IMG/VR virus record: IMGVR_UViG_3300014494_000005
Coordinates: 62,001 to 126,000 of that record
Direction: 5' to 3' (one strand)
Length of the DNA stretch: 64,000 nt
Positions 525 to 61,133 of this stretch are shown here, in pieces (within the stretch, counting starts at the first letter, position 1; the number at the start of each line of letters is the position of its first letter). The notes beneath the pieces were generated by a model. The model saw only the letters and a list, made by a program, of their open reading frames with translations. It did no database searches and was not told where the DNA came from. A program made the position numbers and the translations under genes.

Positions 525-533
525 TATAAATAC
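525..533 (-). promoter_or_regulatory. Phage GTATTTATA upstream motif
   Basis: Plus TATAAATAC, 17 nt before ATG 508. Confidence 0.7.
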
Positions 534-538
534 TTGAT

Positions 539-1156
539 TTAATTGTAAATTATCTCTGGGTTATTTTTTTTGAGTTTGGTTTTTATATAATTAACTCTAT
601 TACTAATTGTAGAACTTGTAACATTAAATTCTTTTCCAATTTCGCAATAATCGTATCCTTGAACGTATTTCATATCAAGCAATGTAAAATCTTGTGGTGA
701 TATTTGTGTTGAAATATAACTTATTGAACTATTATTTTCGAATTCCATATTATTTGTAGTACATATTCCATTTGCCATAAATGTTAAACTGCATGTATTA
801 TTGGATGTCGTGGTGAATGAATTACTAATATCTGCTGATGATGTAAATGATATATTACCAGTTATTGATGTAGCGGTACAAGAATTATTTCTCCATTTAT
901 CAATCATATAATTTTTAGCAATACTAAAAACCCATGACCTAAATTTTGATTTTGTACAATCAAATGATTTTAAATTTAAAAAAACTTTAATCATTATTTC
1001 AGATACATCATCTTCAAGGTCGTAATAAATAGAATATTTACTTTTTAAAAAATTTTTAACAGATTTTTTATATTTGTTATATAGTTTTTCTTGTGCTTGT
1101 TGATTTCCATTCAAAATATTTTGAATAAGTATCGTATCTTCCTGTTCTATTATCAT
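539..1156 (-). CDS. ECF-type (sigma-70 family) RNA polymerase sigma factor
   Basis: Region 2 (D..LI..IL.GN..A.EKLY..Y; FRSWVFSIAKNYMIDKWR) and region 4 HTH (YDYCEIGKEFNVTSSTISNRVNYIKTKLK). Start moved to MIIEQED at 1156. Confidence 0.85.
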   Translation of the reverse strand: MIIEQEDTILIQNILNGNQQAQEKLYNKYKKSVKNFLKSKYSIYYDLEDDVSEIMIKVFLNLKSFDCTKSKFRSWVFSIAKNYMIDKWRNNSCTATSITGNISFTSSADISNSFTTTSNNTCSLTFMANGICTTNNMEFENNSSISYISTQISPQDFTLLDMKYVQGYDYCEIGKEFNVTSSTISNRVNYIKTKLKKNNPEIIYN

Positions 1157-2147
1157 ATGGTTTTTGTAACTTATTAATAAAATAATCATCTATAGTTAAA
1201 CCTCTTGCAGTATAAAGACTTTTAATTACTTCATCAATTCCTTTATTTTTACGAAGTTCATCTAAATCTTTTTCATTTGGAATTTTAACTAATTTAACCC
1301 TTTCTTCACAGCCAACATAAATAGTATGTAACATATAATATAGTTCTATAGCATTTTTATAGGCATCAGGGTCTAACAAAATAACGACATCAGGTTTTAA
1401 TTCTTGCAGTTTCAAAAACAATGTGGCTGATAATGTTTTTCCTAATATTGGTATAATATTGACGGGAAATGATAACATTTCAAACGCACCTTCAACAAGG
1501 TATACAGTAGAATCCCAATTTACAAAACCTTCATTAAAAATGATTTTATCTTTATCCGCAAATGGATTTAAATATTTTTTTCTTTTTTCTTTCGGGTCAT
1601 AACTTCTACCAACAAAATAATTTATTTCACCGTTCTTATCATAAGATGGAATAATTATTCTTTTAGCATATTTTCCAGTAGTACAAAAACCAAGCCGATA
1701 TTTTAAAATAATATCTCGACTTATTTTTCTTTCATTAATGATATAATTATATGCTTCAAAATGTTCAGGATTTCCTTCTTCTAATTGAGAAAACGATATC
1801 ATTTCATTAGGAAGTTTAATTTGTACAAATTCTTTTTCATCTTCATTATTACTATAATCAATTAAAATGTTAGCATATGACTTATATATATCATAATCCA
1901 TATGACTACCAAACATTCTAATTAACCTACCCAAAGAACCAGAAAATTTAGGTTCATCACATTTCCAACAACGAAACATTCGTTTGGCAGTATTTATTTC
2001 CAAATTAAATTTTTCATCTGGATAAGATAAACCTTCTCTTTCTTGACAACGAGGACAATTTACTTGCAATTGTTCGCTTTGCAAATAACCATTAACATCA
2101 CCAAAAATATTTTGAATGATAGCGTGAAATTCTTGTCCTCTAACCAT
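1077..2147 (-). CDS. dnaG: DNA primase (Zn-ribbon + TOPRIM)
   Basis: CPRC...CWKC zinc finger, IIIPSYD..G...YFVGR, VYLVEG TOPRIM, LLDPDA, KDLDE. Confidence 0.85.
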   Translation of the reverse strand: MVRGQEFHAIIQNIFGDVNGYLQSEQLQVNCPRCQEREGLSYPDEKFNLEINTAKRMFRCWKCDEPKFSGSLGRLIRMFGSHMDYDIYKSYANILIDYSNNEDEKEFVQIKLPNEMISFSQLEEGNPEHFEAYNYIINERKISRDIILKYRLGFCTTGKYAKRIIIPSYDKNGEINYFVGRSYDPKEKRKKYLNPFADKDKIIFNEGFVNWDSTVYLVEGAFEMLSFPVNIIPILGKTLSATLFLKLQELKPDVVILLDPDAYKNAIELYYMLHTIYVGCEERVKLVKIPNEKDLDELRKNKGIDEVIKSLYTARGLTIDDYFINKLQKPYDNRTGRYDTYSKYFEWKSTSTRKTI

Positions 2148-2151
2148 TATA

Positions 2152-3121: not shown

Positions 3122-3125
3122 ATTA

Positions 3126-4244
3126 TTAAATTATTTGAGGTTTTAAAATATTTATTAATTTATTATTTAGAAATTCATTAATGTTTTTTTCTTTATATGA
3201 AATTCTTATTAATTGAATATTATTATTCGAACAATATTCATTTTTTATTATATCATTTTGTTTTAAATTTAAAAATTCAATCAATGCCTCATTATCTGAT
3301 AATAATTTATTAAATTTTACTATTTCAAAATGTTGTTTTCCATCAAATTCAATTAATATATTATGATTTGGTAAATAAAAATCAAAAGGAAGTTTAAATA
3401 TTTTTCCAATACAATCGTCAAATTTTTTTTGATGTTCAAATTTAATATTATTATTTTTTAGATAATTAATTATTTGTTGTTCACCTTTACTACTTTTACA
3501 TATAGGACAACCACTACCAACTAAATGATTACTTGTTTTTTGAATAAAAGAACCATGAATAGGACAAATAATTTCAATTTTACTTCTATTTGAAATATAG
3601 ATACTATTGGAATAATCATATTTATTACCATGAATCTTTTTTGCTTTTTCAATAAAAACATCTTTATTACATTTATGACCACAACAATATGAACAACCTG
3701 AACCACCTAAATGGTAATTTGGTTTTTGCTCAAACTCACCATGTTTGGGACATATTATTTTTACTTTACTAATATTATCGACATAAACTACTTTAGAATA
3801 ATCATATTTATTGCTATGAATTTTATTTGCTTTCTCAATAAAATATTCAGTATTCATAAATAGACCAGCACATTTAGCACATCCCTTACCAATTAAATGC
3901 GATTTTGGTTCTTGAAAAAATTCTCCATGTTTAGGACAAATTATAGAAATTGGAGAAGTATTATTAATATAAACTGATTTAGAATAATCATATTTATTAT
4001 TGTGTATAATTTTTACTTTATTGATAAATTCATTTATGTTAGATTTTAATTTTCCATAACAAATAGGACAACCCCGACCACGTAAATGTGAATCTGGTTG
4101 TTGTTCAAATATACCATGCGTCAAACATATAATTTTAATTTTTGTTCTATTATTAAGATAATTAACTAAAGAATAATCATATTCATTGTGATGAATATGA
4201 TTAGCTTTCATTATAAATTCTTTAGTTGTTAATCTTTTTGACAT
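3126..4244 (-). CDS. Homing-endonuclease-like protein: 4 Zn-binding repeats (DUF723-like) + C-terminal PD-(D/E)XK/Vsr-like nuclease
   Basis: Four ~60-aa repeats K.H..KYDYS.V.Y.N....IIC..HG.F.Q.P..HL.G.GC..C, then FDFYLP..NILIEFDG.QH. Start moved to MSKRLTT (4244). Confidence 0.8.
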   Translation of the reverse strand: MSKRLTTKEFIMKANHIHHNEYDYSLVNYLNNRTKIKIICLTHGIFEQQPDSHLRGRGCPICYGKLKSNINEFINKVKIIHNNKYDYSKSVYINNTSPISIICPKHGEFFQEPKSHLIGKGCAKCAGLFMNTEYFIEKANKIHSNKYDYSKVVYVDNISKVKIICPKHGEFEQKPNYHLGGSGCSYCCGHKCNKDVFIEKAKKIHGNKYDYSNSIYISNRSKIEIICPIHGSFIQKTSNHLVGSGCPICKSSKGEQQIINYLKNNNIKFEHQKKFDDCIGKIFKLPFDFYLPNHNILIEFDGKQHFEIVKFNKLLSDNEALIEFLNLKQNDIIKNEYCSNNNIQLIRISYKEKNINEFLNNKLINILKPQII

Positions 4245-4260
4245 TAATGTTTTAATTATA

Positions 4261-5688
4261 TTAATCAATATTTAAATTAGCGTTTAAATGCGCCAATAAT
4301 CCTGTCTTATCGTTCCAGATAAAACCATCTGCAGCTTTTATAGCACCTATAAAACCTTTCGAAAAATGCCATTGGTCAGTACCTGTCAAACTTGATAAAT
4401 ATCTAACAGTAACACCAAGGTCTTCGCTTAATACTTTTGCTTTATCTAAAACTGTGAATTTAATATCTTTTTTACGATGAATGTGCCCAATATGAAATTC
4501 ATGATATAAAGTATTACTCCAATATGGTTTAGATTCAATATCACTTGCCATTAATAATGGTAATGAATTTTCTTTTTCTTCACTACCATGAGTAAATCCA
4601 AGTAAAACATTACCGTGTTTATAATATTTTCGTGGTAAAGCATCGTTATTAACACATACTTGTTCATCACCATTAAACCATGCTTCTAAATATGAACCCA
4701 TATAATAACTACGTTCAAAATCATGATTGCCGGGAATTACAATTATATCAATTGGTACACCAATTTGTTTTAATATATTAATGCCATCAACCAAAAGTTT
4801 AACACCCACTGTAAATGTTTTTTGCCATCTAACATCTTCATCTTGACTAGTTTGATGACTTGTCGTATCAAACATATTATCTGAATTAAAAAAATCATTT
4901 CCAACTGGAAATAATATTCGGGTAATAGGAAATCCACTTGCATGTCTTAATAATGTTTCAATTGCATTAATAAATCTTTTACTTGCGATTTTTATGTCAT
5001 AATCCTCACCAGTTTCGCCATGCCATGCTAATTTACCAAAATGTAAATCAAATATGCTAATTTCGAGTAAATTATTCTCTTCAGATTTTTTTTGTAATTT
5101 TGGAGTAACATTTAAAATAGGTGGTTTATACGTTTGTGCCATGTCAGCAAATATCTTTTGAATATCTATTGCTTCACTAAGTTGAACATCTTTTTCAAGA
5201 CGTGCTTTAACTTGAAAGTTTTGAATTGTTTCAGGATTTTCTTTTTTCCATGAAGTAACATCCCATTTATTAATTACAAAATCTTTTACTTTCCAAATAT
5301 CTAAATCAACATCAGCTACTTCAAGTAATTCATCAAGAGTTTTTATGTGATTTACCGGATAATTTGAACCAGTTTTCCATTCAACTTCCATTTCATTTCC
5401 TTTACCAGTAATAGTTGTTTTTCCATCTGATTTTTCTTTATTTATAATATTATCTTCTTTTATACTAAAACCACGATAATATTTATATTCTTCATATGCT
5501 TGATTAAATAATTCAAATAGTTCATCTTCAAGAATTCCATTATAATATTCATCATATGCCAATGCTTTGATGTTTTTTACATATGTATCTGAATACCCAC
5601 ATTTTACTGAGGCTTCTTTAACCGATATTTGATTTTTTGTTGCGTAATTAAGGATTTCTACTGCTTTTTCTATTCGTTCTTTTTTCAT
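4261..5688 (-). CDS. Calcineurin-like metallophosphoesterase with N-terminal HTH
   Basis: DLHFG, GND, GNHD, THG, GHIH motifs. Likely ATG start at 5688 (MKKERIEK); the track start at 5730 is a TTG. Confidence 0.8.
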   Translation of the reverse strand: MKKERIEKAVEILNYATKNQISVKEASVKCGYSDTYVKNIKALAYDEYYNGILEDELFELFNQAYEEYKYYRGFSIKEDNIINKEKSDGKTTITGKGNEMEVEWKTGSNYPVNHIKTLDELLEVADVDLDIWKVKDFVINKWDVTSWKKENPETIQNFQVKARLEKDVQLSEAIDIQKIFADMAQTYKPPILNVTPKLQKKSEENNLLEISIFDLHFGKLAWHGETGEDYDIKIASKRFINAIETLLRHASGFPITRILFPVGNDFFNSDNMFDTTSHQTSQDEDVRWQKTFTVGVKLLVDGINILKQIGVPIDIIVIPGNHDFERSYYMGSYLEAWFNGDEQVCVNNDALPRKYYKHGNVLLGFTHGSEEKENSLPLLMASDIESKPYWSNTLYHEFHIGHIHRKKDIKFTVLDKAKVLSEDLGVTVRYLSSLTGTDQWHFSKGFIGAIKAADGFIWNDKTGLLAHLNANLNID

Positions 5689-5732
5689 GTATATATAATT
5701 AGATAAAATTATTTTTTGATGTTTTGTCAAAC

Positions 5733-6071
5733 TTAATACAAATATACCAAAAACACAAGGTTTTTTATAAATACATTTCCACTTTTTTTCAAAAATACTA
5801 GATTTTCCTCAATTTTTTGACATTCTTTATTGAAAGTGGTTTCATTAATTACAGATAAATCAAACCATTCACCTTCTTTTTTTAAGTGTGAATATCTTCG
5901 TTGTAATGTTCTTTCGATTTGATGTGCAAATTCTGATTGATATGAATCAATTAATTTTAATTCAGAAGAGTTTCCCGTTTGCAATTCTTTTAGACGTTTA
6001 TTTGGATGCTTAGATACTCCAATTTTATAATAACTATTTTCTAATGATTGAATTAAATATATGTATTTCAT
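5733..6071 (-). CDS. GIY-YIG superfamily protein (T5orf172/MUG113-like)
   Basis: YIYLI...YYKIGVSK.P.KRLKELQTGN...GEWF. Confidence 0.8.
   Translation of the reverse strand: MKYIYLIQSLENSYYKIGVSKHPNKRLKELQTGNSSELKLIDSYQSEFAHQIERTLQRRYSHLKKEGEWFDLSVINETTFNKECQKIEENLVFLKKSGNVFIKNLVFLVYLY
5739..5746 (-). promoter_or_regulatory. Bacteroidota-type -7 element upstream of metallophosphoesterase
   Basis: Sense TATATTTG; no clear -33 box. Confidence 0.4.
5766..5774 (-). promoter_or_regulatory. Phage GTATTTATA upstream motif (inside GIY-YIG gene)
   Basis: Plus TATAAATAC, 78 nt before ATG 5688. Confidence 0.45.
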
Positions 6072-9063: not shown

Positions 9064-9072
9064 TATAAATAC
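9064..9072 (-). promoter_or_regulatory. Phage GTATTTATA upstream motif
   Basis: 17 nt before ATG 9047. Confidence 0.7.
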
Positions 9073-10064: not shown

Positions 10065-10073
10065 TATAAATAC
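10065..10073 (-). promoter_or_regulatory. Phage GTATTTATA upstream motif
   Basis: 25 nt before ATG 10040; part of palindrome TATTTATAAATA. Confidence 0.7.
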
Positions 10074-14630: not shown

Positions 14631-14639
14631 TATAAATAC
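14631..14639 (-). promoter_or_regulatory. Phage GTATTTATA upstream motif
   Basis: 17 nt before GTG 14614, immediately after a terminator. Confidence 0.75.
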
Positions 14640-14642: not shown

Positions 14643-14680
14643 AAAAAGAAAAATCCCAAATCTAAGATTGGGATTTTTTT
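14643..14680 (-). terminator. Intrinsic terminator (possibly bidirectional)
   Basis: AAAATCCCAAATCT / AGATTGGGATTTT stem with A/T runs on both sides. Confidence 0.75.
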
Positions 14681-14702: not shown

Positions 14703-15605
14703 TTATAAACCATTTGTAACTGAATTAAAGTTTTGTGTTTCGTCTAGATTCACACGTTTTTCTTTGACTTCATATAATGGCACATTACCAACATCATCTT
14801 TTATTTCATAAATATTAAATTGTTTTGTAATAACCCTATTTTCATCGTAATATGTTAATATTCCATTGTCAACATCTTTAATTTGTTCACCAGCAACAAT
14901 ATTAGAAAGAGTATCAATTGTATTTGCAACTAAATCGACTTCAATTACAAGTGGTGAAAAAAATGTATTTGAAATAATAATTGTTTGATTTGGATTACCA
15001 ATAAATGGTGAAATATTTGGTTTTACGTCTGAAGAACTACTTGGTGTTAATTGTAAAAATAATAAAGAACCACTATCATCAAAACGATATCTAATAGCTT
15101 TTTGACTGGTATTTCCAACATTTTCACTAACAGGAACTACTTTATTTGAGGTTACTACATAACGAACAACATTTCTTATTTTTTTATTGGTAGTTGCATC
15201 AATATATTCAATTCGATATCCCTGTAATGCATTATTTGCTTTCATATTTGATGGTAATTGATTACTATCAAGTACAATTCCTCTTACACTTGGTAATGAA
15301 GATAATACACTACAATCAATAATTGTAGTTATGGTTTTTTTAGGTTTTATATATAATGTATAAATACCTAAATTAGAAAATACTGATGCTGGTAGTCTTA
15401 AATTATATAATCCTTCAAGAAGATTTTCATTACCAGAAATTTGTTCATCTGTTGGTAAATAATTATATGATAATATTTCAGAAGTATTTAATTTAAATAT
15501 ATCATTATTTAATGTTTCCCTATTAGGAATATAATTATAATAAATATCAATATCATCGATACTAACATCTGCTGGTCTTGTTATGCCAAATGTACCTACT
15601 GCCAT
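14703..15605 (-). CDS. Putative virion structural protein
   Basis: 300-aa ORF with its own upstream motif and downstream terminator, within structural cluster. Confidence 0.6.
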   Translation of the reverse strand: MAVGTFGITRPADVSIDDIDIYYNYIPNRETLNNDIFKLNTSEILSYNYLPTDEQISGNENLLEGLYNLRLPASVFSNLGIYTLYIKPKKTITTIIDCSVLSSLPSVRGIVLDSNQLPSNMKANNALQGYRIEYIDATTNKKIRNVVRYVVTSNKVVPVSENVGNTSQKAIRYRFDDSGSLLFLQLTPSSSSDVKPNISPFIGNPNQTIIISNTFFSPLVIEVDLVANTIDTLSNIVAGEQIKDVDNGILTYYDENRVITKQFNIYEIKDDVGNVPLYEVKEKRVNLDETQNFNSVTNGL

Positions 15606-15621: not shown

Positions 15622-15630
15622 TATAAATAC
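15622..15630 (-). promoter_or_regulatory. Phage GTATTTATA upstream motif
   Basis: 17 nt before ATG 15605. Confidence 0.7.
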
Positions 15631-21085: not shown

Positions 21086-21094
21086 TATAAATAC
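21086..21094 (-). promoter_or_regulatory. Phage GTATTTATA upstream motif
   Basis: 16 nt before ATG 21070 (gp25-like), immediately after a terminator. Confidence 0.75.
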
Positions 21095-23082: not shown

Positions 23083-23694
23083 TTAACTATTATTTGCTTC
23101 ATTAGTCATATTATTAATTTTTTGTTCAACATTTTCTTTTTTCAATTCATCCAAATCAATTACTAATTTATTATTAATAATTGATTCTTTTTTTAAATCA
23201 TTCAAAGTAGTGGAAATATTATTTAATTCATTATTTAATGATAATTCTTTTTTTGCCTTATTATAATACACATCATTATAATCGTCAACAAATTTTTTAA
23301 ATTCATTAAAAAGATTCTTATAATATTCACCTTTCCAATTTCCATCTCGTTTAATAATTCTTTTATTTAATAAAACAGCTTCTGCTAAATAGTTAACAAA
23401 CCTAGTTTCAACACCAGAAGGAAACCTAGTTTCAACACCAGAAGGAAAAAAAGTTTGTTGAACTTTATTTTTAATTTCATCGATTTCTGGATATTCTTTC
23501 TTGATATTATCAAATCTCACATCCTCATCGAATGTAGTATTTGATTTATTGTCAACATTTTCTACTTTACCAATATCATCAGATTTGTTATAAATGTTCT
23601 GATATTTTACTGCATTTAATAATTCTTCTATTAAGAAAGGAAGTATTTTGTTAATTTCTTTTCTTATTAATTTTTTAATTTTACTTTTTTTCAT
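23083..23694 (-). CDS. Hypothetical protein with internal 8-aa tandem duplication
   Basis: 203-aa ORF containing FPSGVETR twice. Confidence 0.6.
   Translation of the reverse strand: MKKSKIKKLIRKEINKILPFLIEELLNAVKYQNIYNKSDDIGKVENVDNKSNTTFDEDVRFDNIKKEYPEIDEIKNKVQQTFFPSGVETRFPSGVETRFVNYLAEAVLLNKRIIKRDGNWKGEYYKNLFNEFKKFVDDYNDVYYNKAKKELSLNNELNNISTTLNDLKKESIINNKLVIDLDELKKENVEQKINNMTNEANNS
23398..23448. repeat. Exact 24-bp tandem duplication (in frame)
   Basis: aaacctagtttcaacaccagaagg x2. Confidence 0.95.
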
Positions 23695-23705
23695 GTTTTT
23701 GTTTT

Positions 23706-27281: not shown

Positions 27282-27290
27282 TATAAATAC
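27282..27290 (-). promoter_or_regulatory. Phage GTATTTATA upstream motif
   Basis: 21 nt before ATG 27261. Confidence 0.7.
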
Positions 27291-27297: not shown

Positions 27298-27864
27298 TTA
27301 ATTTTTTAATATATTTTGAATTTCTTCACGAATAATATTTAATATTGTAAATTTGTTTTCTAATAAAGATATTTTACCTTCTTTAGCTAAATATATGTTA
27401 AATCTAATACCTTTTGGAATCTGTTTCTTTATTGCTTCATAAGATTGAATATCAGTATCACGGTCTTCATAAACATTTATTTCCTTTAATTCTGGAAATT
27501 GCTGAATATAACGTAATGTTTTTTTACCCTTATCTGGTTCAGCACGTTTCATATCTACTTTATCAACACTAATATGATTTGCATCAAGTATTGCTTGAAC
27601 TTGTGGACGTAGTTTTTCCATTCTTGATGTAAGAATTACCACATAAGTATTTGGTTTTGCTTGTTCTTCTTTTAATTGTTTTAATACACTTGGAAATGGT
27701 TTAATATTGAAAACATTTAAATCCAAACTCTCAGGTCTGCCCCACCAACCTTGATATGGATATGGTTTTCCTATTTTCTCAGACCACTGAACTTTACCTA
27801 TTTCTTTTTCAGGACTCATTATGAGTGTCGAGTCAAAATCAAATACACAAAGTCTTTTTATCAT
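27298..27864 (-). CDS. HAD-family phosphatase (RNA-repair 'Swiss army knife' HAD type)
   Basis: CVFDFDSTL (DxD motif I), VILTSR (motif II), VYEDR (motif IV). Start moved to ATG 27864, overlapping the upstream TGA (ATGA). Confidence 0.8.
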   Translation of the reverse strand: MIKRLCVFDFDSTLIMSPEKEIGKVQWSEKIGKPYPYQGWWGRPESLDLNVFNIKPFPSVLKQLKEEQAKPNTYVVILTSRMEKLRPQVQAILDANHISVDKVDMKRAEPDKGKKTLRYIQQFPELKEINVYEDRDTDIQSYEAIKKQIPKGIRFNIYLAKEGKISLLENKFTILNIIREEIQNILKN

Positions 27865-28364
27865 AACAAACAATTATATTTCATTTCATTAATATTTCCT
27901 ATTTCTTCGCAATAAGGTTCAAAAAATCTTTTTGGTATTATATACATATCCATTTCTTTGAAAACACCTTTCTTTTGTTCAATCCTTGCTTTTTTCTTAT
28001 ATTCAATTTGATTTATATTTTCAACAATACAATCATGTATTCTTTTTGTTTTAGCAATATATGTAATTTTACCATCACTAATAATCCAATAATCAGCTTT
28101 TGTAATTAATAATCCTGATTGTCTTCCCCAATATCCGGTTTCAATACAAATATTGCCACTAATACTACCCATTTTATCAAATTTACATTCAATTGTTTTT
28201 TGTTTTTCTGCAAAGTTACCATTAAAAAGTATAATATCATAATAACTATATTCTTCTTTTTTCATATTTTTATATGCAAGAGGAAATAATTTTTCATTTA
28301 AATCTTTTAAACAAAAATCCTCAAATTCAAATCCCATTCTTGATGATTCTTTCCAATCAGCCAT
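27861..28364 (-). CDS. PD-(D/E)XK-family nuclease-like protein
   Basis: G.EFE.F, YDIILF, TIECKFD, then ICIET. Confidence 0.6.
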   Translation of the reverse strand: MADWKESSRMGFEFEDFCLKDLNEKLFPLAYKNMKKEEYSYYDIILFNGNFAEKQKTIECKFDKMGSISGNICIETGYWGRQSGLLITKADYWIISDGKITYIAKTKRIHDCIVENINQIEYKKKARIEQKKGVFKEMDMYIIPKRFFEPYCEEIGNINEMKYNCLL

Positions 28365-29435: not shown

Positions 29436-32400
29436 TTAAGCATAAAATATTTTATTTTTAATTGGTATTGCTTGCGGAGAATCCATAATATCTTCACCAT
29501 TTATATATAATTCTTCAATTTTTAATGATGTATTTTTAAATAATGTTATTTCTTTTTCATCTTCGCCAAGAGCCAAATCCATATTAGCATATATTGTATT
29601 AGTCCAATCAATATTGTCTTCTTTCACAGATGTTTTTATTATTGCTTTATTATATTTTTTACTATCTCCCCAATGTGCTTCAGCAGCATTTTCTTCCCAA
29701 GACCAATAAATACCTAAATGTTTTCCTTGTGTACCAATATGATAAATCCAATTATCATCAACTGTCATTTCTCTCCAAATATCAATAGTATCATTTGGTT
29801 TTATTTTTTCTTTTATTTTATCTATTACATCATCATATTTATATTTTAATTCCCATATAAACCATTCTTTAAAATCTTCATTTTGTTCAATAACTTCCTT
29901 ATCTTCATCCTCCAAATTATTTTCATATTTATAATATTCAATATATCTTTCATAATTATCACTACGTTTCACATCTTTTATATATTGCGGTGTTATTATA
30001 TTATCTGAAGTTATTGAATCAATTGGTGTTTCATTTAAAACATCATTATCTGTAAGTTTCCATAATAATTTATGTTTTAATTTTTCATTATGGCTAAAAT
30101 CTTCATAATTATTTTGTAAAAATTCTAATACTGATGCTTCATTTGGGTCTGAATATTCTGCTCTTCCTCTTCCACTTTCAGTATTCCATATATCATATTC
30201 TTTAGCAAAGAAATTAATATCAACTATTTTATTGTTTACAACATATTTACCATCACCAACTTCATGATATTCTTCAGTAAGATTAATAGGCATACTACCA
30301 TATTTAATAAGACCATAATATTCTAAATAAAAATCATATTGTGGATTTTTTCTTTTTGTTGCACGTAATATTTCAATTGATGTTTCTTTTTGGTCTTCAC
30401 CTCTTTGAATAAATTCTTCACCCGAATCACTCAATCCAAAATTATTAGAATCACTTACTCTTTGTAATACTTGATAATTGAAATTATTATATACATATTC
30501 GGTAATTCCTAATATATCTGCCATATCTGCATGATTAAAAGCACCATCAGATTGTGCAACAAATAAGTTTCCATCACTATCAGCAATTGCTCTAACATTT
30601 TTATCAAAATTAGTTAACGATTTTGGATTCTTAAAAAATAAATCACCCTCTTCACTAATTGCATATGGTTTTTCTTTATTTTTTTCTATACCACCCATTG
30701 CTTTAACATCCATTGCAGTATTTGAATCAGGAACATTAAAAGTTTTTTCTGCATATTTATCTGCAACACCTTCTTGTTTTATTGATTTATTTTTTTGACT
30801 TGTCAAATTTAATAAATCATCTCGATTATTCCTAACATTATTTGAATATACCTTTAACAATAATGATTTTAACATATCACCAATCTCTTTACCTTTTAAT
30901 CCAAATTGAATTAAATCATTGCCATTAATTGCTAGTTCACCAACTGCTTTTGGATATTTGCCTTGTAATAATTCTTGTGCTGCGGTTTCAATTACACTAG
31001 GTATTATTTGGCTTTGAAGTGATTGTGGTGATGTTACATACATATTATGCACAACTGTTCGTGCTTCAATTAAATTAGTTGCTTCACCACTATCAAATGC
31101 CATTTCAAGTGCTTTAATTTCCTTATAAGTATCAATATCACCCTTTAAATTATTTTTATAAAATTCTGCAGGATTTGGTAATAATCGTATTAATAAATAA
31201 ATAAACTCACCTATTGTTTTAACTTCTTCAAATGGACTTCTATCAATTGTTGATTGTTTTAAATCAAAATTAAAAATTTGTTGAAATAAACCAGTGTCTT
31301 TAAGTAGTTGTATACCAATACGTTTGTCACCTTTTTTTAAAATTTTATCGAACTCAATTAATATTCTTTCTGGCGGAATTTCTTTAATACGACTTGCATT
31401 ATCTTTAATCATTTGCATTGTTTGTGGTTCAATTGTAAAATCAAAACGACTTGCAAACCCTATCATTCGCATCATACGTAATGGGTCATCTGAAAATGCC
31501 TGTGGATTTGCAGCAGAAATTTGTTTATTTTTTATATCTTCCAATCCACCGAGTGGGTCAATAAATTTACCTGAATTAATATTAATTGCCATTGCATTCA
31601 GCTTTGCGTCACGTCTCGTCAAATCATCTTCAATTGGAAGATTTTCATCACTCTGAACATCAAAACCATGATAACCACCTTCACCATTTGGTTTTTCTTT
31701 ACGTGGTAACGCTATATCATAATCAGTACCATCTTTATCAATAAATTTTATAACACCAAATGATTTGCCAACAACATCAACTTTACCAAATTTTTGTAAT
31801 TGCGATATTAATAAATCAATTGATGTGTTTCTAACAATTAAATCAATATCTTTATTGGGTTTGTTAAGTACCAAATCTCTCACAACCCCACCAACAGCAT
31901 AAATTTCAGACCCTAAGTCATTTATAAGTGATTGAATAAATGGTTTTTGTTTTAAATTATTTACAAATTCAGTAATTTTATTATTTGGTTGTATATTGTT
32001 TTCGCACATATTCTCTGCAATATTTATTGAATCTAAATCAAAAACTACTTTAGCTGGAAATGATGAAATTCCTAATTCTCGTAATGCATCAAATCTATGA
32101 CCACCTTCTAAAACATATGAACCATCTTCATCAATAACAACAATTAGTGGACTAATTTCTTTATTATATTCAATCTGTTTTGCTAATTTTTTTGTTTTTT
32201 GTTCTTCATCAGGAGAATAATATTTTAAATCTCCCATTTGTGGAAATGAATTGAATGAAACTTCTCTAATTCCATTAAGTATTTCATAATTTGTTAATGA
32301 TGCTTCAATTGAATTCATGTTTGGAACATCATTTCGAATTATTAATCCATTAATATTATTTCCATTTATTATTGGAAATTCATGATTTAATGTTTCATAA

Positions 32401-32498
32401 CTAAAATTTTGTGCATTACTGATAACAGATTCATTAATTTGTTTTCTCATATAATTTTCAAATAATATTATTTCACTATTAATAATGTCTATTAGCAT
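29436..32498 (-). CDS. Polyvalent protein: ParB-like + class II CCA-adding/poly(A) polymerase-family nucleotidyltransferase + two unknown domains + ADP-ribosyltransferase-like domain
   Basis: EGGHRFDAL (ParB); YAVGGVVRDL...KDIDL, DDLTRRDAKLNAMA, FSDDPLRMMR, PERI..EF.K (CCA); IWRE / GIYWSW / EDEKEI (R-S-E ART). Start moved to MLIDII (32498), 13 nt from the motif. Confidence 0.85.
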   Translation of the reverse strand: MLIDIINSEIILFENYMRKQINESVISNAQNFSYETLNHEFPIINGNNINGLIIRNDVPNMNSIEASLTNYEILNGIREVSFNSFPQMGDLKYYSPDEEQKTKKLAKQIEYNKEISPLIVVIDEDGSYVLEGGHRFDALRELGISSFPAKVVFDLDSINIAENMCENNIQPNNKITEFVNNLKQKPFIQSLINDLGSEIYAVGGVVRDLVLNKPNKDIDLIVRNTSIDLLISQLQKFGKVDVVGKSFGVIKFIDKDGTDYDIALPRKEKPNGEGGYHGFDVQSDENLPIEDDLTRRDAKLNAMAININSGKFIDPLGGLEDIKNKQISAANPQAFSDDPLRMMRMIGFASRFDFTIEPQTMQMIKDNASRIKEIPPERILIEFDKILKKGDKRIGIQLLKDTGLFQQIFNFDLKQSTIDRSPFEEVKTIGEFIYLLIRLLPNPAEFYKNNLKGDIDTYKEIKALEMAFDSGEATNLIEARTVVHNMYVTSPQSLQSQIIPSVIETAAQELLQGKYPKAVGELAINGNDLIQFGLKGKEIGDMLKSLLLKVYSNNVRNNRDDLLNLTSQKNKSIKQEGVADKYAEKTFNVPDSNTAMDVKAMGGIEKNKEKPYAISEEGDLFFKNPKSLTNFDKNVRAIADSDGNLFVAQSDGAFNHADMADILGITEYVYNNFNYQVLQRVSDSNNFGLSDSGEEFIQRGEDQKETSIEILRATKRKNPQYDFYLEYYGLIKYGSMPINLTEEYHEVGDGKYVVNNKIVDINFFAKEYDIWNTESGRGRAEYSDPNEASVLEFLQNNYEDFSHNEKLKHKLLWKLTDNDVLNETPIDSITSDNIITPQYIKDVKRSDNYERYIEYYKYENNLEDEDKEVIEQNEDFKEWFIWELKYKYDDVIDKIKEKIKPNDTIDIWREMTVDDNWIYHIGTQGKHLGIYWSWEENAAEAHWGDSKKYNKAIIKTSVKEDNIDWTNTIYANMDLALGEDEKEITLFKNTSLKIEELYINGEDIMDSPQAIPIKNKIFYA

Positions 32499-32510: not shown

Positions 32511-32519
32511 TATAAATAC
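32511..32519 (-). promoter_or_regulatory. Phage GTATTTATA upstream motif (leftward of divergent pair)
   Basis: 13 nt before ATG 32498. Confidence 0.75.
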
Positions 32520-32589: not shown

Positions 32590-32598
32590 GTATTTATA
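32590..32598 (+). promoter_or_regulatory. Phage GTATTTATA upstream motif on plus strand (rightward of divergent pair)
   Basis: Reads GTATTTATA on plus, 67 nt before ATG 32665 of the only plus-strand gene. Confidence 0.7.
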
Positions 32599-32664: not shown

Positions 32665-33669
32665 ATGAAAAATTATGATATAAACGAAATTGCAAATTTA
32701 TATTTTATAAAAAAATACTCATTAGAAAAAATAGGAAAACTCATGCACGTACAGCCAAAAAAAATTAGCAATTTATTAAAGATAAATGGATATGTTTTAG
32801 ATAATAGGTCTCATGATGGTAATAGTAGAAGATATTATGTTGATAAAAATTTTTTTAAAAAAATTGATAATAAAAATAAAGCATATGTATTAGGATTAAT
32901 TATTTCAGATGGTTGCATTTATAAAAATGCAATTACATTCACATCTAAAGATATTGAGTTGGTTGAAATCTTAAAGAGAGAACTTAAATCCGAACATAAA
33001 TTAGCAACATATAATGTTTTTGATAAAAGAACAAATAAATATTATTTAAGAAATTCATTATCAATTCCATCTAAAGAAATTATTAATGATTTAAATAATT
33101 TGGGTGTTTTTTCTAAGAAATCCTTTGATTGTCAAATGCCAAATATACCTGAAGAATATTTTTGGCATTTTGTTAGAGGTATTTTTGATGGTGATGGAAC
33201 AATATTTAAAGCAACATCAAATAAGGAAGGATGTTTATATTTTTCAATTATTGGGTCGGAAAATTTATTGACAGAAATAAAAAATAAATTTAATTTAGTG
33301 GGAATATCTAATACAAAAATAATTAATACTGATTATAAATCAAACAATGGACATCTTATTAGAATTAATTACCATTCATTTCATGATGTTAATATATTAA
33401 AAAATAAAATATATTGTGATTCTGAAGACTTAAGGTTATCAAGAAAATATGATTTATTTCAAACACTAAGAGAATATAAAAAAGGTAATTTTGACCACAC
33501 AAAACAATTACGACAAATAAAAATGTATGATTTAAATAATAATTTTATTAAACATTTTAATAATTTTCATGAAGTAAAAAAAGAAACAGGATTATCATAT
33601 AAATCAATTCATAGAGTTGCGATGGGTATTAGAAAAAACACCAAAAAATATATATTTAAATATATTTAA
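32665..33669 (+). mobile_element. Free-standing two-motif LAGLIDADG homing endonuclease with C-terminal NUMOD1-like HTH
   Basis: AYVLGLIISDGCI and FVRGIFDGDGTI; C-terminal IKMYDLNNNFIKHF.N..E....G...I; only plus-strand gene. Confidence 0.85.
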
Positions 33670-37963: not shown

Positions 37964-37972
37964 TATAAATAC
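37964..37972 (-). promoter_or_regulatory. Phage GTATTTATA upstream motif
   Basis: 23 nt before ATG 37941. Confidence 0.7.
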
Positions 37973-39240: not shown

Positions 39241-39249
39241 TATAAATAG
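39241..39249 (-). promoter_or_regulatory. Variant motif (sense CTATTTATA)
   Basis: 33 nt before ATG 39208. Confidence 0.6.
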
Positions 39250-41930: not shown

Positions 41931-41939
41931 TATAAATAC
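41931..41939 (-). promoter_or_regulatory. Phage GTATTTATA upstream motif
   Basis: 15 nt before ATG 41916. Confidence 0.7.
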
Positions 41940-47149: not shown

Positions 47150-47314
47150 TTATTTTTTTATTTCAATTTTACCTTCAATATCTTTTTCCATGAAAAACCT
47201 TAATCTTTTGGAAAGTGATAAGCCATTGTCATCACAAAATTTTTTATATTTTTCAGATAAAACTTTCGATATTTTAATCGTAATTGTATCAACTAATATT
47301 TTTTCTCTTTTCAT
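47150..47314 (-). CDS. Small ribbon-helix-helix protein (54 aa, absent from ORF track)
   Basis: Hand translation MKREKILVDTITIKISKVLSEKYKKFCDDNGLSLSKRLRFFMEKDIEGKIEIKK*; upstream motif 47334-47342. Confidence 0.7.
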   Translation of the reverse strand: MKREKILVDTITIKISKVLSEKYKKFCDDNGLSLSKRLRFFMEKDIEGKIEIKK

Positions 47315-47333: not shown

Positions 47334-47342
47334 TATAAATAC
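47334..47342 (-). promoter_or_regulatory. Phage GTATTTATA upstream motif
   Basis: 20 nt before ATG 47314. Confidence 0.7.
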
Positions 47343-49967: not shown

Positions 49968-49976
49968 TATAAATAC
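49968..49976 (-). promoter_or_regulatory. Phage GTATTTATA upstream motif
   Basis: 16 nt before ATG 49952. Confidence 0.7.
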
Positions 49977-55854: not shown

Positions 55855-55863
55855 TATAAATAC
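55855..55863 (-). promoter_or_regulatory. Phage GTATTTATA upstream motif
   Basis: 15 nt before ATG 55840. Confidence 0.75.
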
Positions 55864-55928: not shown

Positions 55929-56177
55929 TTATGCCGAATATGTGAAACCAAATCTACAATCCCAAGCAAAACCAAATTCTTGAGAACCATTTGGAAAACC
56001 TATGCTCCATTCACTACCTGATTTACAAATTCTTTTTATTTTCCAAGTATCTTTACTTATGTCTTTACTATTTGCTGAAACACCAATATAAATTTCATTT
56101 GATGATACTTCATCAATCAACATTGGTGATTCAATATTAGAAGGTAATTGAATGCTAAAATCTAATCCTTGTGCCAT
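55929..56177 (-). CDS. Small tail-associated protein
   Basis: 82 aa; IYIG.......WKIKRI......F..AWD.R..FTY; own upstream motif. Confidence 0.6.
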   Translation of the reverse strand: MAQGLDFSIQLPSNIESPMLIDEVSSNEIYIGVSANSKDISKDTWKIKRICKSGSEWSIGFPNGSQEFGFAWDCRFGFTYSA

Positions 56178-56190: not shown

Positions 56191-56199
56191 TATAAATAC
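56191..56199 (-). promoter_or_regulatory. Phage GTATTTATA upstream motif
   Basis: 14 nt before ATG 56177. Confidence 0.7.
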
Positions 56200-56230: not shown

Positions 56231-57142
56231 TTACTTTTGTTTATTAACTGCTTCAATAATTTTATTTATATCTAATACATTTACCGTATCATAAGGAAAC
56301 TGCTGTATCTGTCCTGCGATATCGAATTGGTCAAGATAACTAAATTTATTTAATTCTCTTACATAATTTGCACTTGGTATAACATTAATGTTTTCAGCAT
56401 AACCAAAAACTTCTGGTTTATTTCCAATCCATACAACAGTACTTTGTAAATCCAAAGCTGCTGCTACATGCTGAGCAAAACTATCGATAAATAATCTTTT
56501 AGTACTTAATGGAAATACTGCATATAATTCTCTATGTGGTAAATTAAGTTGTTCCACTCCTTGAAGAACTGGTTGTTCTGGAGATTTAATATGTAAAATC
56601 CTATATGATTTATTGAAATAATTTACAAGTTTTTGAGCAATTTCAATTGGCATATCTCTATACCAAGATTTTTTTGAATATTGTCCTTGTGGAGAACCAC
56701 CATGTGTTTGTAATAACATAATTGGTCTATTATCCGGTTTTATTTTATCTTTAGCAATTTCAATTTCTCTTGGATTTAAATATATTTTTGGTTTATATCC
56801 ATCATAAGGAATATTAAACATATCACACCAAGATTGTGTAAGATGTTTTCTTTGAAGAATATGGTCTTCACTATGATAAACTTCATGTCTGAAAATTTTA
56901 GTTGTTGGTCGAATAAAATCTGAAAAAAAGTACTGCATTTGACCAAAAGTATAAAATCTAAAAACGTCTGGATTATAAAAATAAGGTCCGTCCCATGCAC
57001 AAACAACCACAATTTTATATTCAGGATATGCTTTTTTTATTGCTCTTATTAAAGCACTAGACATTATACATTTACCATGACCACCTTCAACATGTACAAT
57101 TGCAAATTTATCATCATCTTTTATTTTGTCATCTATTATCAT
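56231..57142 (-). CDS. Glycosyltransferase (GT9 heptosyltransferase-like)
   Basis: GG.GK.IM..ALIRAIKKAYPE..I.V; FIDSFAQHVAAAL....VVW. Confidence 0.75.
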   Translation of the reverse strand: MIIDDKIKDDDKFAIVHVEGGHGKCIMSSALIRAIKKAYPEYKIVVVCAWDGPYFYNPDVFRFYTFGQMQYFFSDFIRPTTKIFRHEVYHSEDHILQRKHLTQSWCDMFNIPYDGYKPKIYLNPREIEIAKDKIKPDNRPIMLLQTHGGSPQGQYSKKSWYRDMPIEIAQKLVNYFNKSYRILHIKSPEQPVLQGVEQLNLPHRELYAVFPLSTKRLFIDSFAQHVAAALDLQSTVVWIGNKPEVFGYAENINVIPSANYVRELNKFSYLDQFDIAGQIQQFPYDTVNVLDINKIIEAVNKQK

Positions 57143-57186: not shown

Positions 57187-57195
57187 TATAAATAC
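57187..57195 (-). promoter_or_regulatory. Phage GTATTTATA upstream motif
   Basis: 45 nt before ATG 57142. Confidence 0.6.
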
Positions 57196-59986: not shown

Positions 59987-60005
59987 TTTTTTATATTTTT
60001 ATTTA

Positions 60006-61082
60006 TTAACTTATTAACATTGATGATGTTACACATGTTTGTTTATTACTAATATAAACTTTATAACTTTGTCCTGACCAACAAACTGTTGTAACACTAG
60101 TTATATTAGATGATGGAAATAAATTACATGCAGGACTAATACCGCCACCAATAGAACCATTATTAAGTGCAGTTATACACCAACATGTTTTATCTGTATT
60201 TGATGCTGGATATGCAAACCACAAATAATCATCACTACCACTATTAAAATTAATACTAATAGAACTTGATGAACTTGCAACAATTTTAGTTCCACCACCT
60301 ACCATAGCACTTGTTGCTGTTGGACGATTTGCTCCCGCAGCACCGGGACAAGTACATTTACCCCAAAAATATGGATAAATACCTGTTAATGATGCTGTTT
60401 GTTGTGTTGTATCACCAGCAGAAAGAGGTGAACCATAATTACCACCTGCACTATTTTTTGGCTGAACACCAGCACAATATGTTACACATGAACACCATGT
60501 TTGTGTACCCGCAGAAATAACATAAGAAGCAGCACATTTAGTTACACTTAATGCAGTGCATGCATAATTTCCAGTAACACCAACACCATTATATTTATAA
60601 CAACATGCACCATTACTTATTTTATTACATGTTGCTGTATATTGTGGATTAATACATCCTTGATTTAATGTAGTTATTACGCATAATGTTGAAATACTAC
60701 AACCAACTTCAAAAGTTCCTGAAGGATTTAAAGAAATTGAACTTGATGGATTAGTTAAAACTGGATTTAAAGTAGGAACTAATATTTCTTTTAGTATTTC
60801 GTTTGATGTTTTACCAGTTAAAATTGTTCCAACATCAATACCACCGACACATACTGAAGTAGGACTTGCTAATTTATAAACAGTACTACCAGTAGCACCA
60901 CTTGCTTGAAGGTCGACATATCTTTTATCAACAACTTGTGTATTTCCAGTAAAATCAGGATGTATTTGATATCTTAAATCACCAACTGTTGCAACTTGAG
61001 TTTTACCACTTAATACTAATGAACTATTTTGAGTTTGTTCAACATGTTGATTTGTTAATTTAATTTTTGTATTAAATGCCAT
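60006..61082 (-). CDS. Tail-associated structural protein
   Basis: VVDKRYVD; VGGI..GT.LTG.T..EIL..IL.PT..P; C-terminal YLWFAYP. Confidence 0.7.
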   Translation of the reverse strand: MAFNTKIKLTNQHVEQTQNSSLVLSGKTQVATVGDLRYQIHPDFTGNTQVVDKRYVDLQASGATGSTVYKLASPTSVCVGGIDVGTILTGKTSNEILKEILVPTLNPVLTNPSSSISLNPSGTFEVGCSISTLCVITTLNQGCINPQYTATCNKISNGACCYKYNGVGVTGNYACTALSVTKCAASYVISAGTQTWCSCVTYCAGVQPKNSAGGNYGSPLSAGDTTQQTASLTGIYPYFWGKCTCPGAAGANRPTATSAMVGGGTKIVASSSSSISINFNSGSDDYLWFAYPASNTDKTCWCITALNNGSIGGGISPACNLFPSSNITSVTTVCWSGQSYKVYISNKQTCVTSSMLIS

Positions 61083-61124
61083 AATTTTATTTATTATATA
61101 TTATAATTTTATTTTTCTTTTAAT

Positions 61125-61133
61125 AATAAATAG
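61125..61133 (-). promoter_or_regulatory. Variant motif (sense CTATTTATT)
   Basis: 43 nt before ATG 61082. Confidence 0.5.

What the first reader, a model, noticed from the sequence alone, without database searches (positions are those of the whole stretch)
525..61133. Genome-wide upstream motif GTATTTATA is the reverse complement of the T4 late promoter
Seen: about 22 copies, mostly 8-45 nt before start codons. Many sit in tiny intergenic gaps or just after terminators. On plus they read TATAAATA(C/G) for minus-strand genes. For the only plus-strand gene the motif flips (GTATTTATA at 32590-32598), giving an internal orientation control. Established: T4 sigma gp55 recognises TATAAATA on the sense strand, so this is the opposite polarity. 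Inference: a distinct single-box phage promoter, plausibly read by the ECF-like sigma at 539-1156. It also corrects several ORF-track starts (32498, 55840).
Basis: partly seen in the sequence, partly recalled or inferred. Interest (0 to 1): 0.68.

Follow-up and report, generated by a model that had tools for sequence, protein, structure and literature searches.

The report
Late promoter box of jumbo phage

Summary
The window has 18 exact GTATTTATA copies (17 on the minus strand, 1 on the plus) against 3.8±2.0 in shuffles. Sixteen lie 12-66 nt before a start codon on the same strand, and a seventeenth lies 77 nt before one. The whole 348,923-bp phage genome has 80 copies, 62 of them in the 8.8% that is intergenic. 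The box is the only invariant block in aligned orthologous upstream regions of relatives. It has no -35 partner. It precedes tail sheath, portal, capsid-operon, baseplate and fibre genes, so it is a single-box late promoter.

The genome has a second class, TGYAAC-N16-CGTA. This is a textbook ECF-type two-box promoter, it sits before rIIA/rIIB and small early genes, and it is the natural target of the two ECF sigmas. Outside the window lies a highly conserved 254-aa sigma. T4 gp55 is its best structural match among 48,161 PDB chains (Z 10.3).

A cultured Flavobacterium phage carries that protein but has no ECF sigma and no ECF-type promoter. It still has TATTTATA before its late genes. "Opposite polarity" is literally true, but the box shares 6 of 8 bases with the T4 box in the same polarity. 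No transcript data could be obtained.

The parts
525..533 (-). GTATTTATA box, 16 nt before the ATG at 508 of the gene that runs off the window start (454 aa in the full genome)
   Evidence: the same box is conserved just downstream of the ECF sigma gene in relatives
539..1189 (-).
   Evidence: Pfam Sigma70_r2 4e-13, Sigma70_ECF 4e-6, r4 9e-5; phrog_1740. Last gene of an operon that starts at about 5688
5766..5774 (-). GTATTTATA box 77 nt before the ATG at 5688, heading the operon that ends with ECF sigma #1
   Evidence: conserved in at least 10 relatives with the downstream host-type promoter
5728..5758 (-). Host-type (Bacteroidota sigma-A-like) promoter: TTG, 20 nt, TAAGTTTG, in tandem with the box above
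   Evidence: TTG-N20-TAnnTTTG is kept in relatives L019, L023 and others; consensus from PMC6847099
6938..6946 (-). Variant box GTATTTATT, 7 nt before the ATG at 6930 (77-aa gene)
   Evidence: GTATTTATT is the only common variant enriched in intergenic DNA (23 of 45)
9064..9072 (-). GTATTTATA box, 16 nt before the ATG at 9047 (437-aa gene)
   Evidence: the only invariant non-coding block in nine aligned orthologous upstream regions
10065..10073 (-). GTATTTATA box, 24 nt before the ATG at 10040 (317-aa gene)
14631..14639 (-). GTATTTATA box, 16 nt before the GTG at 14614 (1509-aa gene), directly behind a terminator-like hairpin at 14649-14678
15622..15630 (-). GTATTTATA box, 16 nt before the ATG at 15605 (300-aa gene)
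21086..21094 (-). GTATTTATA box, 15 nt before the ATG at 21070 (baseplate wedge subunit, 132 aa)
   Evidence: phrog_261, 5e-18
27282..27290 (-). GTATTTATA box, 20 nt before the ATG at 27261 (280-aa gene)
32511..32519 (-). GTATTTATA box, 12 nt before the ATG at 32498. It sets the start of the 1020-aa poly(A)-polymerase/CCA-enzyme-like gene (ORF track gave TTG at 32534)
32590..32598 (+). GTATTTATA box on the plus strand, 66 nt before the only plus-strand gene (32665-33669, endonuclease)
   Evidence: (phrog_4645, 8e-44)
37964..37972 (-). GTATTTATA box, 22 nt before the ATG at 37941 (237-aa gene)
39241..39249 (-). Variant box CTATTTATA, 32 nt before the ATG at 39208 (93-aa gene); weaker candidate
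41931..41939 (-). GTATTTATA box, 14 nt before the ATG at 41916 (212-aa gene)
47334..47342 (-). GTATTTATA box, 19 nt before the ATG at 47314 of a 54-aa ORF (47150-47314) missed by the 60-aa ORF track
49968..49976 (-). GTATTTATA box, 15 nt before the ATG at 49952 (103-aa gene)
55855..55863 (-). GTATTTATA box, 14 nt before the ATG at 55840. It sets the start of the 1725-aa tail-fibre-like gene (ORF track gave 55990)
56191..56199 (-). GTATTTATA box, 13 nt before the ATG at 56177 (82-aa gene)
57187..57195 (-). GTATTTATA box, 44 nt before the ATG at 57142 (303-aa gene)
15359..15367 (-). Exact GTATTTATA inside the coding region of 14703-15605 with no start codon behind it; probably a chance copy

Best explanation
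GTATTTATA (core GTATTTAT, then A or T) is the late-gene promoter of this phage and its whole family. These are T4-related jumbo myoviruses with a gp23-type capsid protein, and their host is probably a member of the Bacteroidota/Flavobacteriia.

The box is a single -10-like element on the non-template strand, without a -35 box. Transcription would start a few bases downstream. That gives leaders of about 8-12 nt, or leaderless mRNAs where the ATG follows after 3-5 nt.

The phage encodes no RNA polymerase detectable by the Pfam models tried, so the box must be read by host core polymerase carrying a phage specificity factor. The most likely factor is the highly conserved 254-aa gp55-like sigma encoded outside the window (genome 175,942-176,706). 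The ECF sigma at window 539-1189 is less likely.

The two ECF sigmas more plausibly read a separate early/middle class, TGYAAC-N16-CGTA. ECF sigma #1 is itself made early from a host-type promoter (TTG-N20-TAnnTTTG).

Shown: the motif statistics, orientation, conservation, gene classes and protein folds. Inferred: the start sites, the timing and which sigma reads which class.
For: The box is real and promoter-like.
- 18 copies in the window against 3.8 expected.
- 80 copies genome-wide, 62 of them in the 8.8% that is intergenic, strictly co-oriented with the downstream gene.
- It is the top oriented upstream k-mer in the genome.
- No -35 signal appears in the logo or in k-mer enrichment upstream.
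- Only the last base tolerates change.

The box is conserved.
- It occurs in about 100 IMG/VR relatives: 123 copies against 16 for the control word in 719 kb of loci around the 254-aa gene, over a GC range of 24-40% (GC range).
- It stands before orthologous genes and is the only invariant non-coding block in an alignment of nine orthologous upstream regions.
- All 12 whole records of relatives searched have 21-82 copies.

The box drives late genes.
- Downstream genes include tail sheath and portal, the gp23-type capsid operon, and baseplate wedge and fibre-like genes.
- The TGYAAC-N16-CGTA class instead drives rIIA, rIIB, a Mom-like gene and small ORFs.

No phage RNA polymerase was found.

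The 254-aa protein is a gp55-like sigma.
- AlphaFold model with pLDDT 90.5.
- Its best match among 48,161 PDB representatives is T4 gp55 (7d7d_F, Z 10.3, 116 residues aligned). Rows 2-30 are sigma factors or sigma-like subunits, apart from one engineered scaffold.
- 14 of 73 family members hit phrog_234, which is the T4 gp55 family.
- hhalign against T4 gp55 gives E 7e-4.

Co-occurrence without an ECF sigma.
- Flavobacterium phage immuto gp118 belongs to the family (hhalign 99.7%).
- That complete genome has no Sigma70_r2 hit and no ECF-type promoter.
- TATTTATA(A/T) lies 10-25 nt before its terminase, portal, tail spike and sheath genes.
- Two more distant contigs show the same box after the sigma-like gene.

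ECF promoters are two-box (AAC / CGT[A/C]) in the literature (PMC5758882).

A parallel three-class layout with a gp55-like sigma is described for phage CBB (PMC5259590).
Against: - Promoter function and start sites are therefore inferred.
- The gp55 relationship is remote. The sequence evidence is weak (HMM E 1 against the gp55 chain in PDB, hhalign probability 27%) and rests mainly on the fold.
- No gp33 co-activator or gp45-type clamp was found. The T4 activation mechanism is therefore not reproduced.
- The 254-aa protein has a C-terminal sigma4-like domain, although no -35 box exists.
- ECF sigma #1's operon is headed by a GTATTTATA box.
- All 12 close relatives carry both promoter classes and both kinds of sigma, so co-occurrence within the family is uninformative.
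- The discriminating case is a single lineage (immuto), whose box lacks the 5' G.
- The box also precedes non-structural genes: an endonuclease, a poly(A)-polymerase-like gene and the primase/sigma operon. 'Late' may therefore mean middle plus late.
Confidence: 0.55

Rival explanations
1. One reading: GTATTTATA is read by the ECF-type sigma encoded at window 539-1189, acting as an unusual single-box ECF promoter.
For: - The sigma is real and is present in all relatives that carry the box.
- Its operon is headed by a conserved GTATTTATA box, which would fit the usual autoregulation of ECF sigmas.
- There are two ECF sigmas and possibly only one ECF-type promoter class.
Against: - ECF sigmas characteristically need a -35 AAC box and a -10 CGT box (PMC5758882). 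The genome holds exactly such a class with a rigid 16-nt spacer, in two sub-types that could serve the two ECF sigmas.
- GTATTTATA has no -35 partner.
- Phage immuto uses the TATTTATA box without any Sigma70_r2 protein.
- The same operon also has a host-type promoter, which marks this sigma as an early product.
Confidence: 0.2
2. The box is not a promoter but an RNA-level signal in the 5' leader. It could be a processing site or a translation-initiation element suited to a host without Shine-Dalgarno pairing.
For: - Spacing to the start codon is tight (mode 13-16 nt).
- The genome has no Shine-Dalgarno sequences (GGAG in 3 of 470 leaders). It has the Bacteroidota pattern of A at -3, -6 and -11 to -13, so unusual initiation signals are plausible.
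- The A-rich patch after the box could be that translation signal.
Against: - Boxes also work at 20-77 nt from starts.
- 13 of 62 boxes lie directly behind terminator-like hairpins.
- They head operons rather than every gene. The capsid gene itself has none.
- Most genes (about 400 of 470) lack the box.
- Conserved orthologues have the ATG only 3-5 nt after the box. That fits leaderless transcripts but not a ribosome-contact element.
Confidence: 0.07
3. The box is the binding site of a phage or host transcription regulator (activator or repressor), or is read by a host alternative sigma. In this model the phage gp55-like protein does something else.
For: - No experiment links any protein to the box.
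- The 5' G and the strict 8-base core would also suit a sequence-specific DNA-binding protein.
Against: - No second promoter element accompanies the box at a fixed distance.
- The box is invariant across relatives spanning 24-40% GC that probably infect different hosts. That favours a phage-encoded reader.
- A near-invariant 16-residue block lies in the region of the 254-aa protein equivalent to sigma regions 2.3-2.4. This mirrors the invariance of the box.
Confidence: 0.1

Closest known systems
Bacteriophage T4 late promoter (TATAAATA) read by gp55, with gp33 and the gp45 clamp
   Same: - A single AT-rich octamer at about -10 with no -35 box.
- It stands before capsid, portal, sheath, baseplate and fibre genes, and before homing-endonuclease genes.
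- The phage has a gp23-type capsid and rIIA/rIIB.
- A phage protein whose best structural match is gp55.
- 6 of 8 bases identical in the same polarity.
- T4's own box was checked before gene 34.
   Different: - The two central bases are TT instead of AA, so the word is the exact reverse complement of the T4 box.
- A strongly required 5' G in the jumbo family.
- Sense-oriented TATAAATA is not enriched (16 against 57 of 470 genes).
- No gp33 or gp45 homologue was found.
- The sigma is 254 aa with an extra C-terminal sigma4-like domain.
- The host is probably Bacteroidota.
Rak2-like jumbo phage vB_PcaM_CBB / GAP32 promoter classes (PMC5259590)
   Same: - Genome of about 350 kb.
- Three predicted classes: host RpoD-like before small early genes; a variant with an ECF-like -35 (TGAAACG) near DNA-synthesis genes and a gp55-like sigma gene; and an ATAAATA late box before structural genes.
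- No gp33 or gp45 was found there either.
   Different: - CBB's late box keeps the T4 word.
- CBB's hosts are enterobacteria with Shine-Dalgarno sequences.
- The middle class here has a CGTA -10 and a rigid N16 spacer, not a TATA -10.
ECF sigma promoters, e.g. Bacillus subtilis sigma-W/X/M/V (tgaAAC-N16/17-CGTA/CGTC; PMC5758882)
   Same: The genome's other class, TG(T/C)AAC-N16-CGTA(TA), matches this pattern. The match includes a T-tract after the -35 box in one sub-type.
   Different: GTATTTATA itself has neither an AAC -35 box nor a CGT -10 box. It does not fit this family.
Flavobacterium phage vB_FspM_immuto (NC_055915)
   Same: - A cultured T4-like myovirus of Flavobacterium.
- It carries a member of the same 254-aa sigma-like family.
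- It has TATTTATA(A/T) 10-25 nt before its late genes.
   Different: - 160 kb, not jumbo.
- No ECF sigma and no ECF-type promoters.
- The base before the box is C or A, not G.
- No promoter analysis of this phage was found in the paper library.

Membership tests
T4-type late transcription system | Promoter is the octamer TATAAATA on the non-template strand at about -13 to -6 | tested here: not met
   The sense-strand word is TATTTATA (6 of 8 identical). Sense-oriented TATAAATA occurs before 16 of 470 genes, against 57 for TATTTATA and 68 for GTATTTAT
T4-type late transcription system | Single box, no -35 element | tested here: met
   The position logo is flat from -50 to -2. No k-mer is enriched upstream except terminator T-tracts
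T4-type late transcription system | Phage encodes a gp55-family sigma | tested here: met
   254-aa protein: best PDB match is gp55, Z 10.3. 14 of 73 family members hit phrog_234, and T4 gp55 defines phrog_234. A 108-aa paralogue also hits phrog_234 at 4e-7. The relationship is remote: hhalign probability 27%
T4-type late transcription system | gp33 co-activator present | tested here: not met
   phrog_254 (the T4 gp33 family) has no match in the genome at E<=1. The C-terminal domain of the 254-aa protein shows no similarity to gp33
T4-type late transcription system | gp45-type sliding clamp present | tested here: not met
   PF09116 and PF02916 have no match at E<=1. A very divergent clamp cannot be excluded
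T4-type late transcription system | Drives virion structural (late) genes | tested here: met
   Tail sheath and portal, gp23-type capsid operon, baseplate wedge and fibre-like genes
T4-type late transcription system | Transcripts start about 6 nt downstream of the box, late in infection | not testable with these tools
The only indirect hint is a bimodal distance to the ATG, 3-5 or at least 10 nt
ECF sigma-dependent promoter | -35 box ending in AAC and -10 box CGT(A/C), 16-17 nt apart | tested here: not met
   GTATTTATA has neither. The separate class TGYAAC-N16-CGTA does meet it: 47 hits, and 37 of the 38 intergenic ones have N16
ECF sigma-dependent promoter | The sigma's own operon carries the cognate promoter (autoregulation) | tested here: inconclusive
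   A GTATTTATA box and a host-type promoter head the operon about 4.5 kb upstream of ECF sigma #1. ECF sigma #2 sits behind a degenerate ECF-type promoter
Bacteroidota primary-sigma promoter (-33 TTTG / -7 TAnnTTTG) | -7 box TAnnTTTG | tested here: not met
   GTATTTATA does not contain it. TTG-N18-21-TAnnTTTG exists separately, 26 sense against 6 antisense
Promoters of phage-encoded RNA polymerases (T7-like, phiKZ/AR9-like) | Phage encodes its own RNA polymerase | tested here: not met
   PF00940, PF00562 and PF00623 have no match in the genome. The PF00940 control rang nowhere, so that one test is weak

The most novel reading that the evidence does not exclude
The polarity is meaningful. In this reading, a gp55-like sigma in these Flavobacteriia phages reads the T4 word TATAAATA on the template strand, as the AR9 non-virion polymerase reads its promoter on the template strand. 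The AR9 specificity subunit is among the structural matches (7s01_A, Z 8.2). This would be a cellular polymerase holoenzyme with template-strand -10 recognition. Nothing here tests it. The same-polarity 6-of-8 match is the simpler account.
Probability: 0.04. Interest if true: 0.85.

Novelty: new variant of a known kind. Interest (0 to 1): 0.5.

Why it matters
Promoters of phages that infect Bacteroidota are almost unknown, and the host's own promoters and translation signals differ from the E. coli model. This result gives a usable transcription map for a large family of uncultured jumbo phages of about 350 kb, found on more than 160 IMG/VR contigs.

The map has three promoter classes:
- host-type promoters;
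- an ECF-type early/middle class;
- a single-box late class.

It also includes four sigma-like proteins.

The result suggests that the T4 late system (gp55 plus a -10-like octamer) extends to Flavobacteriia phages with a changed word and without recognisable gp33 or gp45. The box improves gene-start calls and operon boundaries in these genomes. It also names a cultured system, phage immuto on Flavobacterium sp. LMO8, in which the sigma-promoter pairing can be tested directly.

Tried and rejected
- Nucleotide search of the phage collection found nothing.
- A tblastn search with ECF sigma #1 found only one weak fragment.
- Literature searches for the word as a phage promoter found nothing relevant. 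No promoter study of phage immuto was found.
- Sigma-70-type promoters are not enriched in the window: 182 against 178 in shuffles.
- Phylogenetic profiling within the family cannot discriminate between readers. All 12 whole records of relatives carry the GTATTTATA box and at least one ECF sigma, and 11 of the 12 also carry ECF-type promoters; the exception is a record only 45% complete.
- The 108-aa gp55-like ORF is a less likely general reader. The complete relative G004 lacks a detectable orthologue, although it has 45 boxes.
- gp33 and gp45 homologues were not found.
- The first AlphaFold model, from a shallow alignment (pLDDT 72), gave only tied matches. It was replaced by a deeper one.
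With the close alignment it returned only a mis-binned phage contig, which gives no host clue.
- Two look-ups of distant family members returned no DNA.
- A relaxed scan found no ECF-type promoter anywhere in the window.
Full report
**Setting.** The window is bases 62,001-126,000 of a single 348,923-bp virus record. IMG/VR holds the record and CheckV rates it 100% complete. GC content is 26%. Almost all genes in the window lie on the minus strand. The phage has a T4 gp23-type major capsid protein (PF07068, 5e-64). It also has baseplate wedge, tail sheath and portal genes and rIIA/rIIB homologues. No RNA polymerase of its own was found with Pfam models. It is therefore a T4-related jumbo myovirus that must use the host polymerase.

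**The observation.** GTATTTATA occurs 18 times in the window, 17 on the minus strand and 1 on the plus. Dinucleotide-preserving shuffles give 3.77 ± 1.97, and none of 100 shuffles reaches 18.
- Sixteen copies lie 12-66 nt upstream of a start codon on the same strand. A seventeenth lies 77 nt upstream, beside a second promoter. One (15359-15367) is inside a gene and looks like chance.
- Genome-wide there are 80 copies against about 20 expected. Of these, 62 lie in the 8.8% of the genome that my crude ORF map leaves intergenic. In 53 cases an ATG-ORF of at least 50 aa follows within 30 nt. Three control words score 1/14, 5/52 and 6/68 on that measure.
- It is the most enriched oriented word upstream of genes.
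- Only the last base may vary. Replacing the 5' G cuts the intergenic share from 78% to 15-25%.
- The logo is a-GTATTTATA-w-n-a-A-A. Nothing is conserved further upstream, and no k-mer is enriched there apart from terminator T-tracts.
- About a fifth of sites follow a hairpin plus T-run, and a quarter sit in gaps of 60 nt or less.

**Conservation.** Relatives were fetched through the ECF sigma (30 loci, 44-69% identity) and through a 254-aa protein (80 loci).
- They carry the box on the gene strand: 123 copies against 16 for the control word GTATAAATA in 719 kb of loci around the 254-aa gene. This holds in genomes of 24-40% GC.
- The box stands before orthologous genes.
- In an alignment of nine orthologous upstream regions, GTATTTAT is the only invariant non-coding block.
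- All twelve whole records of relatives searched hold 21-82 copies with strong strand bias.

This is strong evidence of function.

**What the box drives.** Downstream genes include tail sheath, portal, the capsid operon, baseplate wedge and fibre-like proteins. They also include homing endonucleases and a transposase. The box is therefore a late promoter, or perhaps a middle-plus-late one.

**Distance to the ATG.** The distance from the box to the ATG peaks at 13-14 nt here and at 13-20 nt in relatives. Values of 6-9 nt are almost absent. In a few conserved orthologues the distance is only 3-5 nt. That pattern fits a start site about 4-6 nt after the box, with short or absent leaders. This is an inference; no start site was mapped.

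**Other signals in the genome.**
- A second oriented class, TG(T/C)AAC-N16-CGTA(TA), has 47 hits. Of the 38 intergenic hits, 37 have exactly a 16-nt spacer. Up to 58 copies occur in relatives, against 0-3 for the reversed control.
- That class lies outside the window, at 190-348 kb and 0-40 kb of the genome. It precedes rIIA, rIIB, a Mom-like gene and many small ORFs.
- It matches the published ECF pattern, tgaAAC(nTTTT)…CGTA/CGTC (PMC5758882).
- It splits into two sub-types that differ just after each box. One sub-type is confined to the cluster that holds the second ECF sigma.
- A host-type class, TTG-N18-21-TAnnTTTG, is enriched 26 to 6 in the sense direction.
- Leaders have no Shine-Dalgarno sequence (GGAG in 3 of 470). 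They show A at -3, -6 and -11 to -13, the Bacteroidota pattern (PMC6847099).

**Candidate readers.** The genome has four sigma-like genes.
1. ECF sigma #1, at window 539-1189.
2. ECF sigma #2, at about 292.6 kb.
3. A 108-aa ORF at about 23.4 kb that hits phrog_234. T4 gp55 defines phrog_234.
4. A 254-aa protein at 175,942-176,706, found through its weak likeness to the 108-aa ORF.

**The 254-aa protein** has no Pfam or PHROG hit of its own.
- It is 67-100% identical across 163 viral contigs and belongs to a family of 677 clusters.
- A model built on 73 diverse members has pLDDT 90.5.
- Of 48,161 PDB representatives, its best match is T4 gp55 (7d7d_F, Z 10.3, rmsd 5.0, 116 residues aligned). 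Rows 2-30 are sigma factors or sigma-like subunits, apart from one engineered scaffold. Foldseek also ranks sigma factors first.
- Fourteen of the 73 members hit phrog_234.
- The family profile finds SigA at E 0.017 and gp55 at E 1 among PDB sequences. hhalign against T4 gp55 gives E 7e-4 over 112 columns.
- A block of 16 invariant residues lies where sigma regions 2.3-2.4 contact the -10 element.

**Which sigma reads the box.**
- Inside the family the question cannot be settled. Every relative has the box and at least one ECF sigma, and 11 of the 12 whole records also have ECF-type promoters.
- The wider family of the 254-aa protein helps. Its only cultured members are the Flavobacterium phages vB_FspM_immuto. 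Their gp118 is a clear member (hhalign 99.7%, E 3e-26).
- That complete 160-kb genome has no Sigma70_r2 match at E≤1 and no TGYAAC-N16-CGTA site. Even so, TATTTATA(A/T) lies 10-25 nt before its terminase, portal, tail spike, sheath and other late genes. The count is 28 on the gene strand and 12 on the other.
- Two still more distant contigs show the same box 14-15 nt before the gene that follows the sigma-like gene.
- The layout fits a cascade. ECF sigma #1 sits behind a conserved host-type promoter. The 108-aa gp55-like gene sits behind an ECF-type promoter.

My estimates are: promoter 0.85, reader is the gp55-like protein 0.55, ECF sigma #1 0.2, something else for the remainder.

**The polarity claim.** T4's box is on the sense strand; I checked it before gene 34. 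The sense-strand word here is its reverse complement. However, TATAAATA and TATTTATA differ only at the two central bases when read in the same direction. No gp33 or gp45 homologue was found. The T4 activation mechanism is therefore not shown here. The extra C-terminal sigma4-like domain of the 254-aa protein might replace gp33, but that is speculation.

**Closest description in the literature.** Phage CBB has three predicted classes and a gp55-like sigma behind an ECF-like -35 promoter. Its late box keeps the T4 word (PMC5259590).

**Limits.** There are no transcript data. My gene map is a greedy ORF call. The gp55 link is mainly structural. The discriminating case rests on one cultured lineage.

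Noticed in passing
Outside the window: genome 190-348 kb and 0-40 kb (e.g. G000 27841-27866, 293195-293220, 317617-317642): A second promoter class, TG(T/C)AAC-N16-CGTA(TA), of canonical ECF type. It has 47 hits, and 37 of the 38 intergenic ones have exactly a 16-nt spacer. It precedes rIIA, rIIB, a Mom-like gene and many small ORFs, and it is conserved in relatives. None occurs in the window.
   Followed up: yes
G000 289-302 kb: A sub-type of the ECF-type promoters (TGTAACCTTTTT…CGTATACT) carries an extra conserved ATAAACCA box about 12 nt downstream. That box occurs upstream of 20 genes in the sense direction and 0 in the antisense. The second ECF sigma gene lies inside this cluster. The role of the extra box is unknown.
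   Followed up: partly
window 5728-5774 (minus strand): Tandem promoters conserved in relatives: a GTATTTATA box followed by a Bacteroidota-type TTG-N20-TAAGTTTG. They lie upstream of the operon 5688→539, which encodes a primase-like protein and ECF sigma #1.
   Followed up: partly
whole genome; window gene starts: No Shine-Dalgarno sequences (GGAG in 3 of 470 leaders). A is enriched at -3, -6 and -11 to -13, the translation-initiation pattern described for Flavobacterium johnsoniae. This points to a Bacteroidota host.
   Followed up: partly
L127 / G006 (JBAZIW010000001.1, 362,763 bp): A complete relative of this phage is deposited in GenBank as 'MAG: Candidatus Paceibacterota bacterium'. The contig is a jumbo phage genome, apparently mis-binned.
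   Followed up: no
window 32665-33669 (+); G000 184343-185911, 189100-190974, 3340-4611: Mobile-element genes each carry their own GTATTTATA box. They are the lone plus-strand endonuclease, two phrog_3339 homing endonucleases and a phrog_506 transposase.
   Followed up: partly
window 29436-32498 (-): A 1020-aa protein with poly(A)-polymerase/CCA-adding-enzyme head and RNA-binding domains at residues 211-576, flanked by large unannotated regions. It is driven by a late box.
   Followed up: no
window 1077-1189: The ECF sigma ORF (start at 1189) overlaps the end of the upstream primase-like ORF by 113 nt. Unresolved.
   Followed up: no
L060, L067-L069, L078, L079, L084, L092, L097, L103 (relatives): In several relatives the tblastn match to the 254-aa gene spans about 1,045-1,115 nt instead of about 750, although a complete ORF of about 250 aa is present. 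The extra matching stretch downstream was not examined.
   Followed up: no
G000 23376-23702 (-): A 108-aa gp55-like ORF (phrog_234, 4e-7) lies in an operon behind an ECF-type promoter. Orthologues were found in only some relatives. Its role beside the 254-aa paralogue is unknown.
   Followed up: partly
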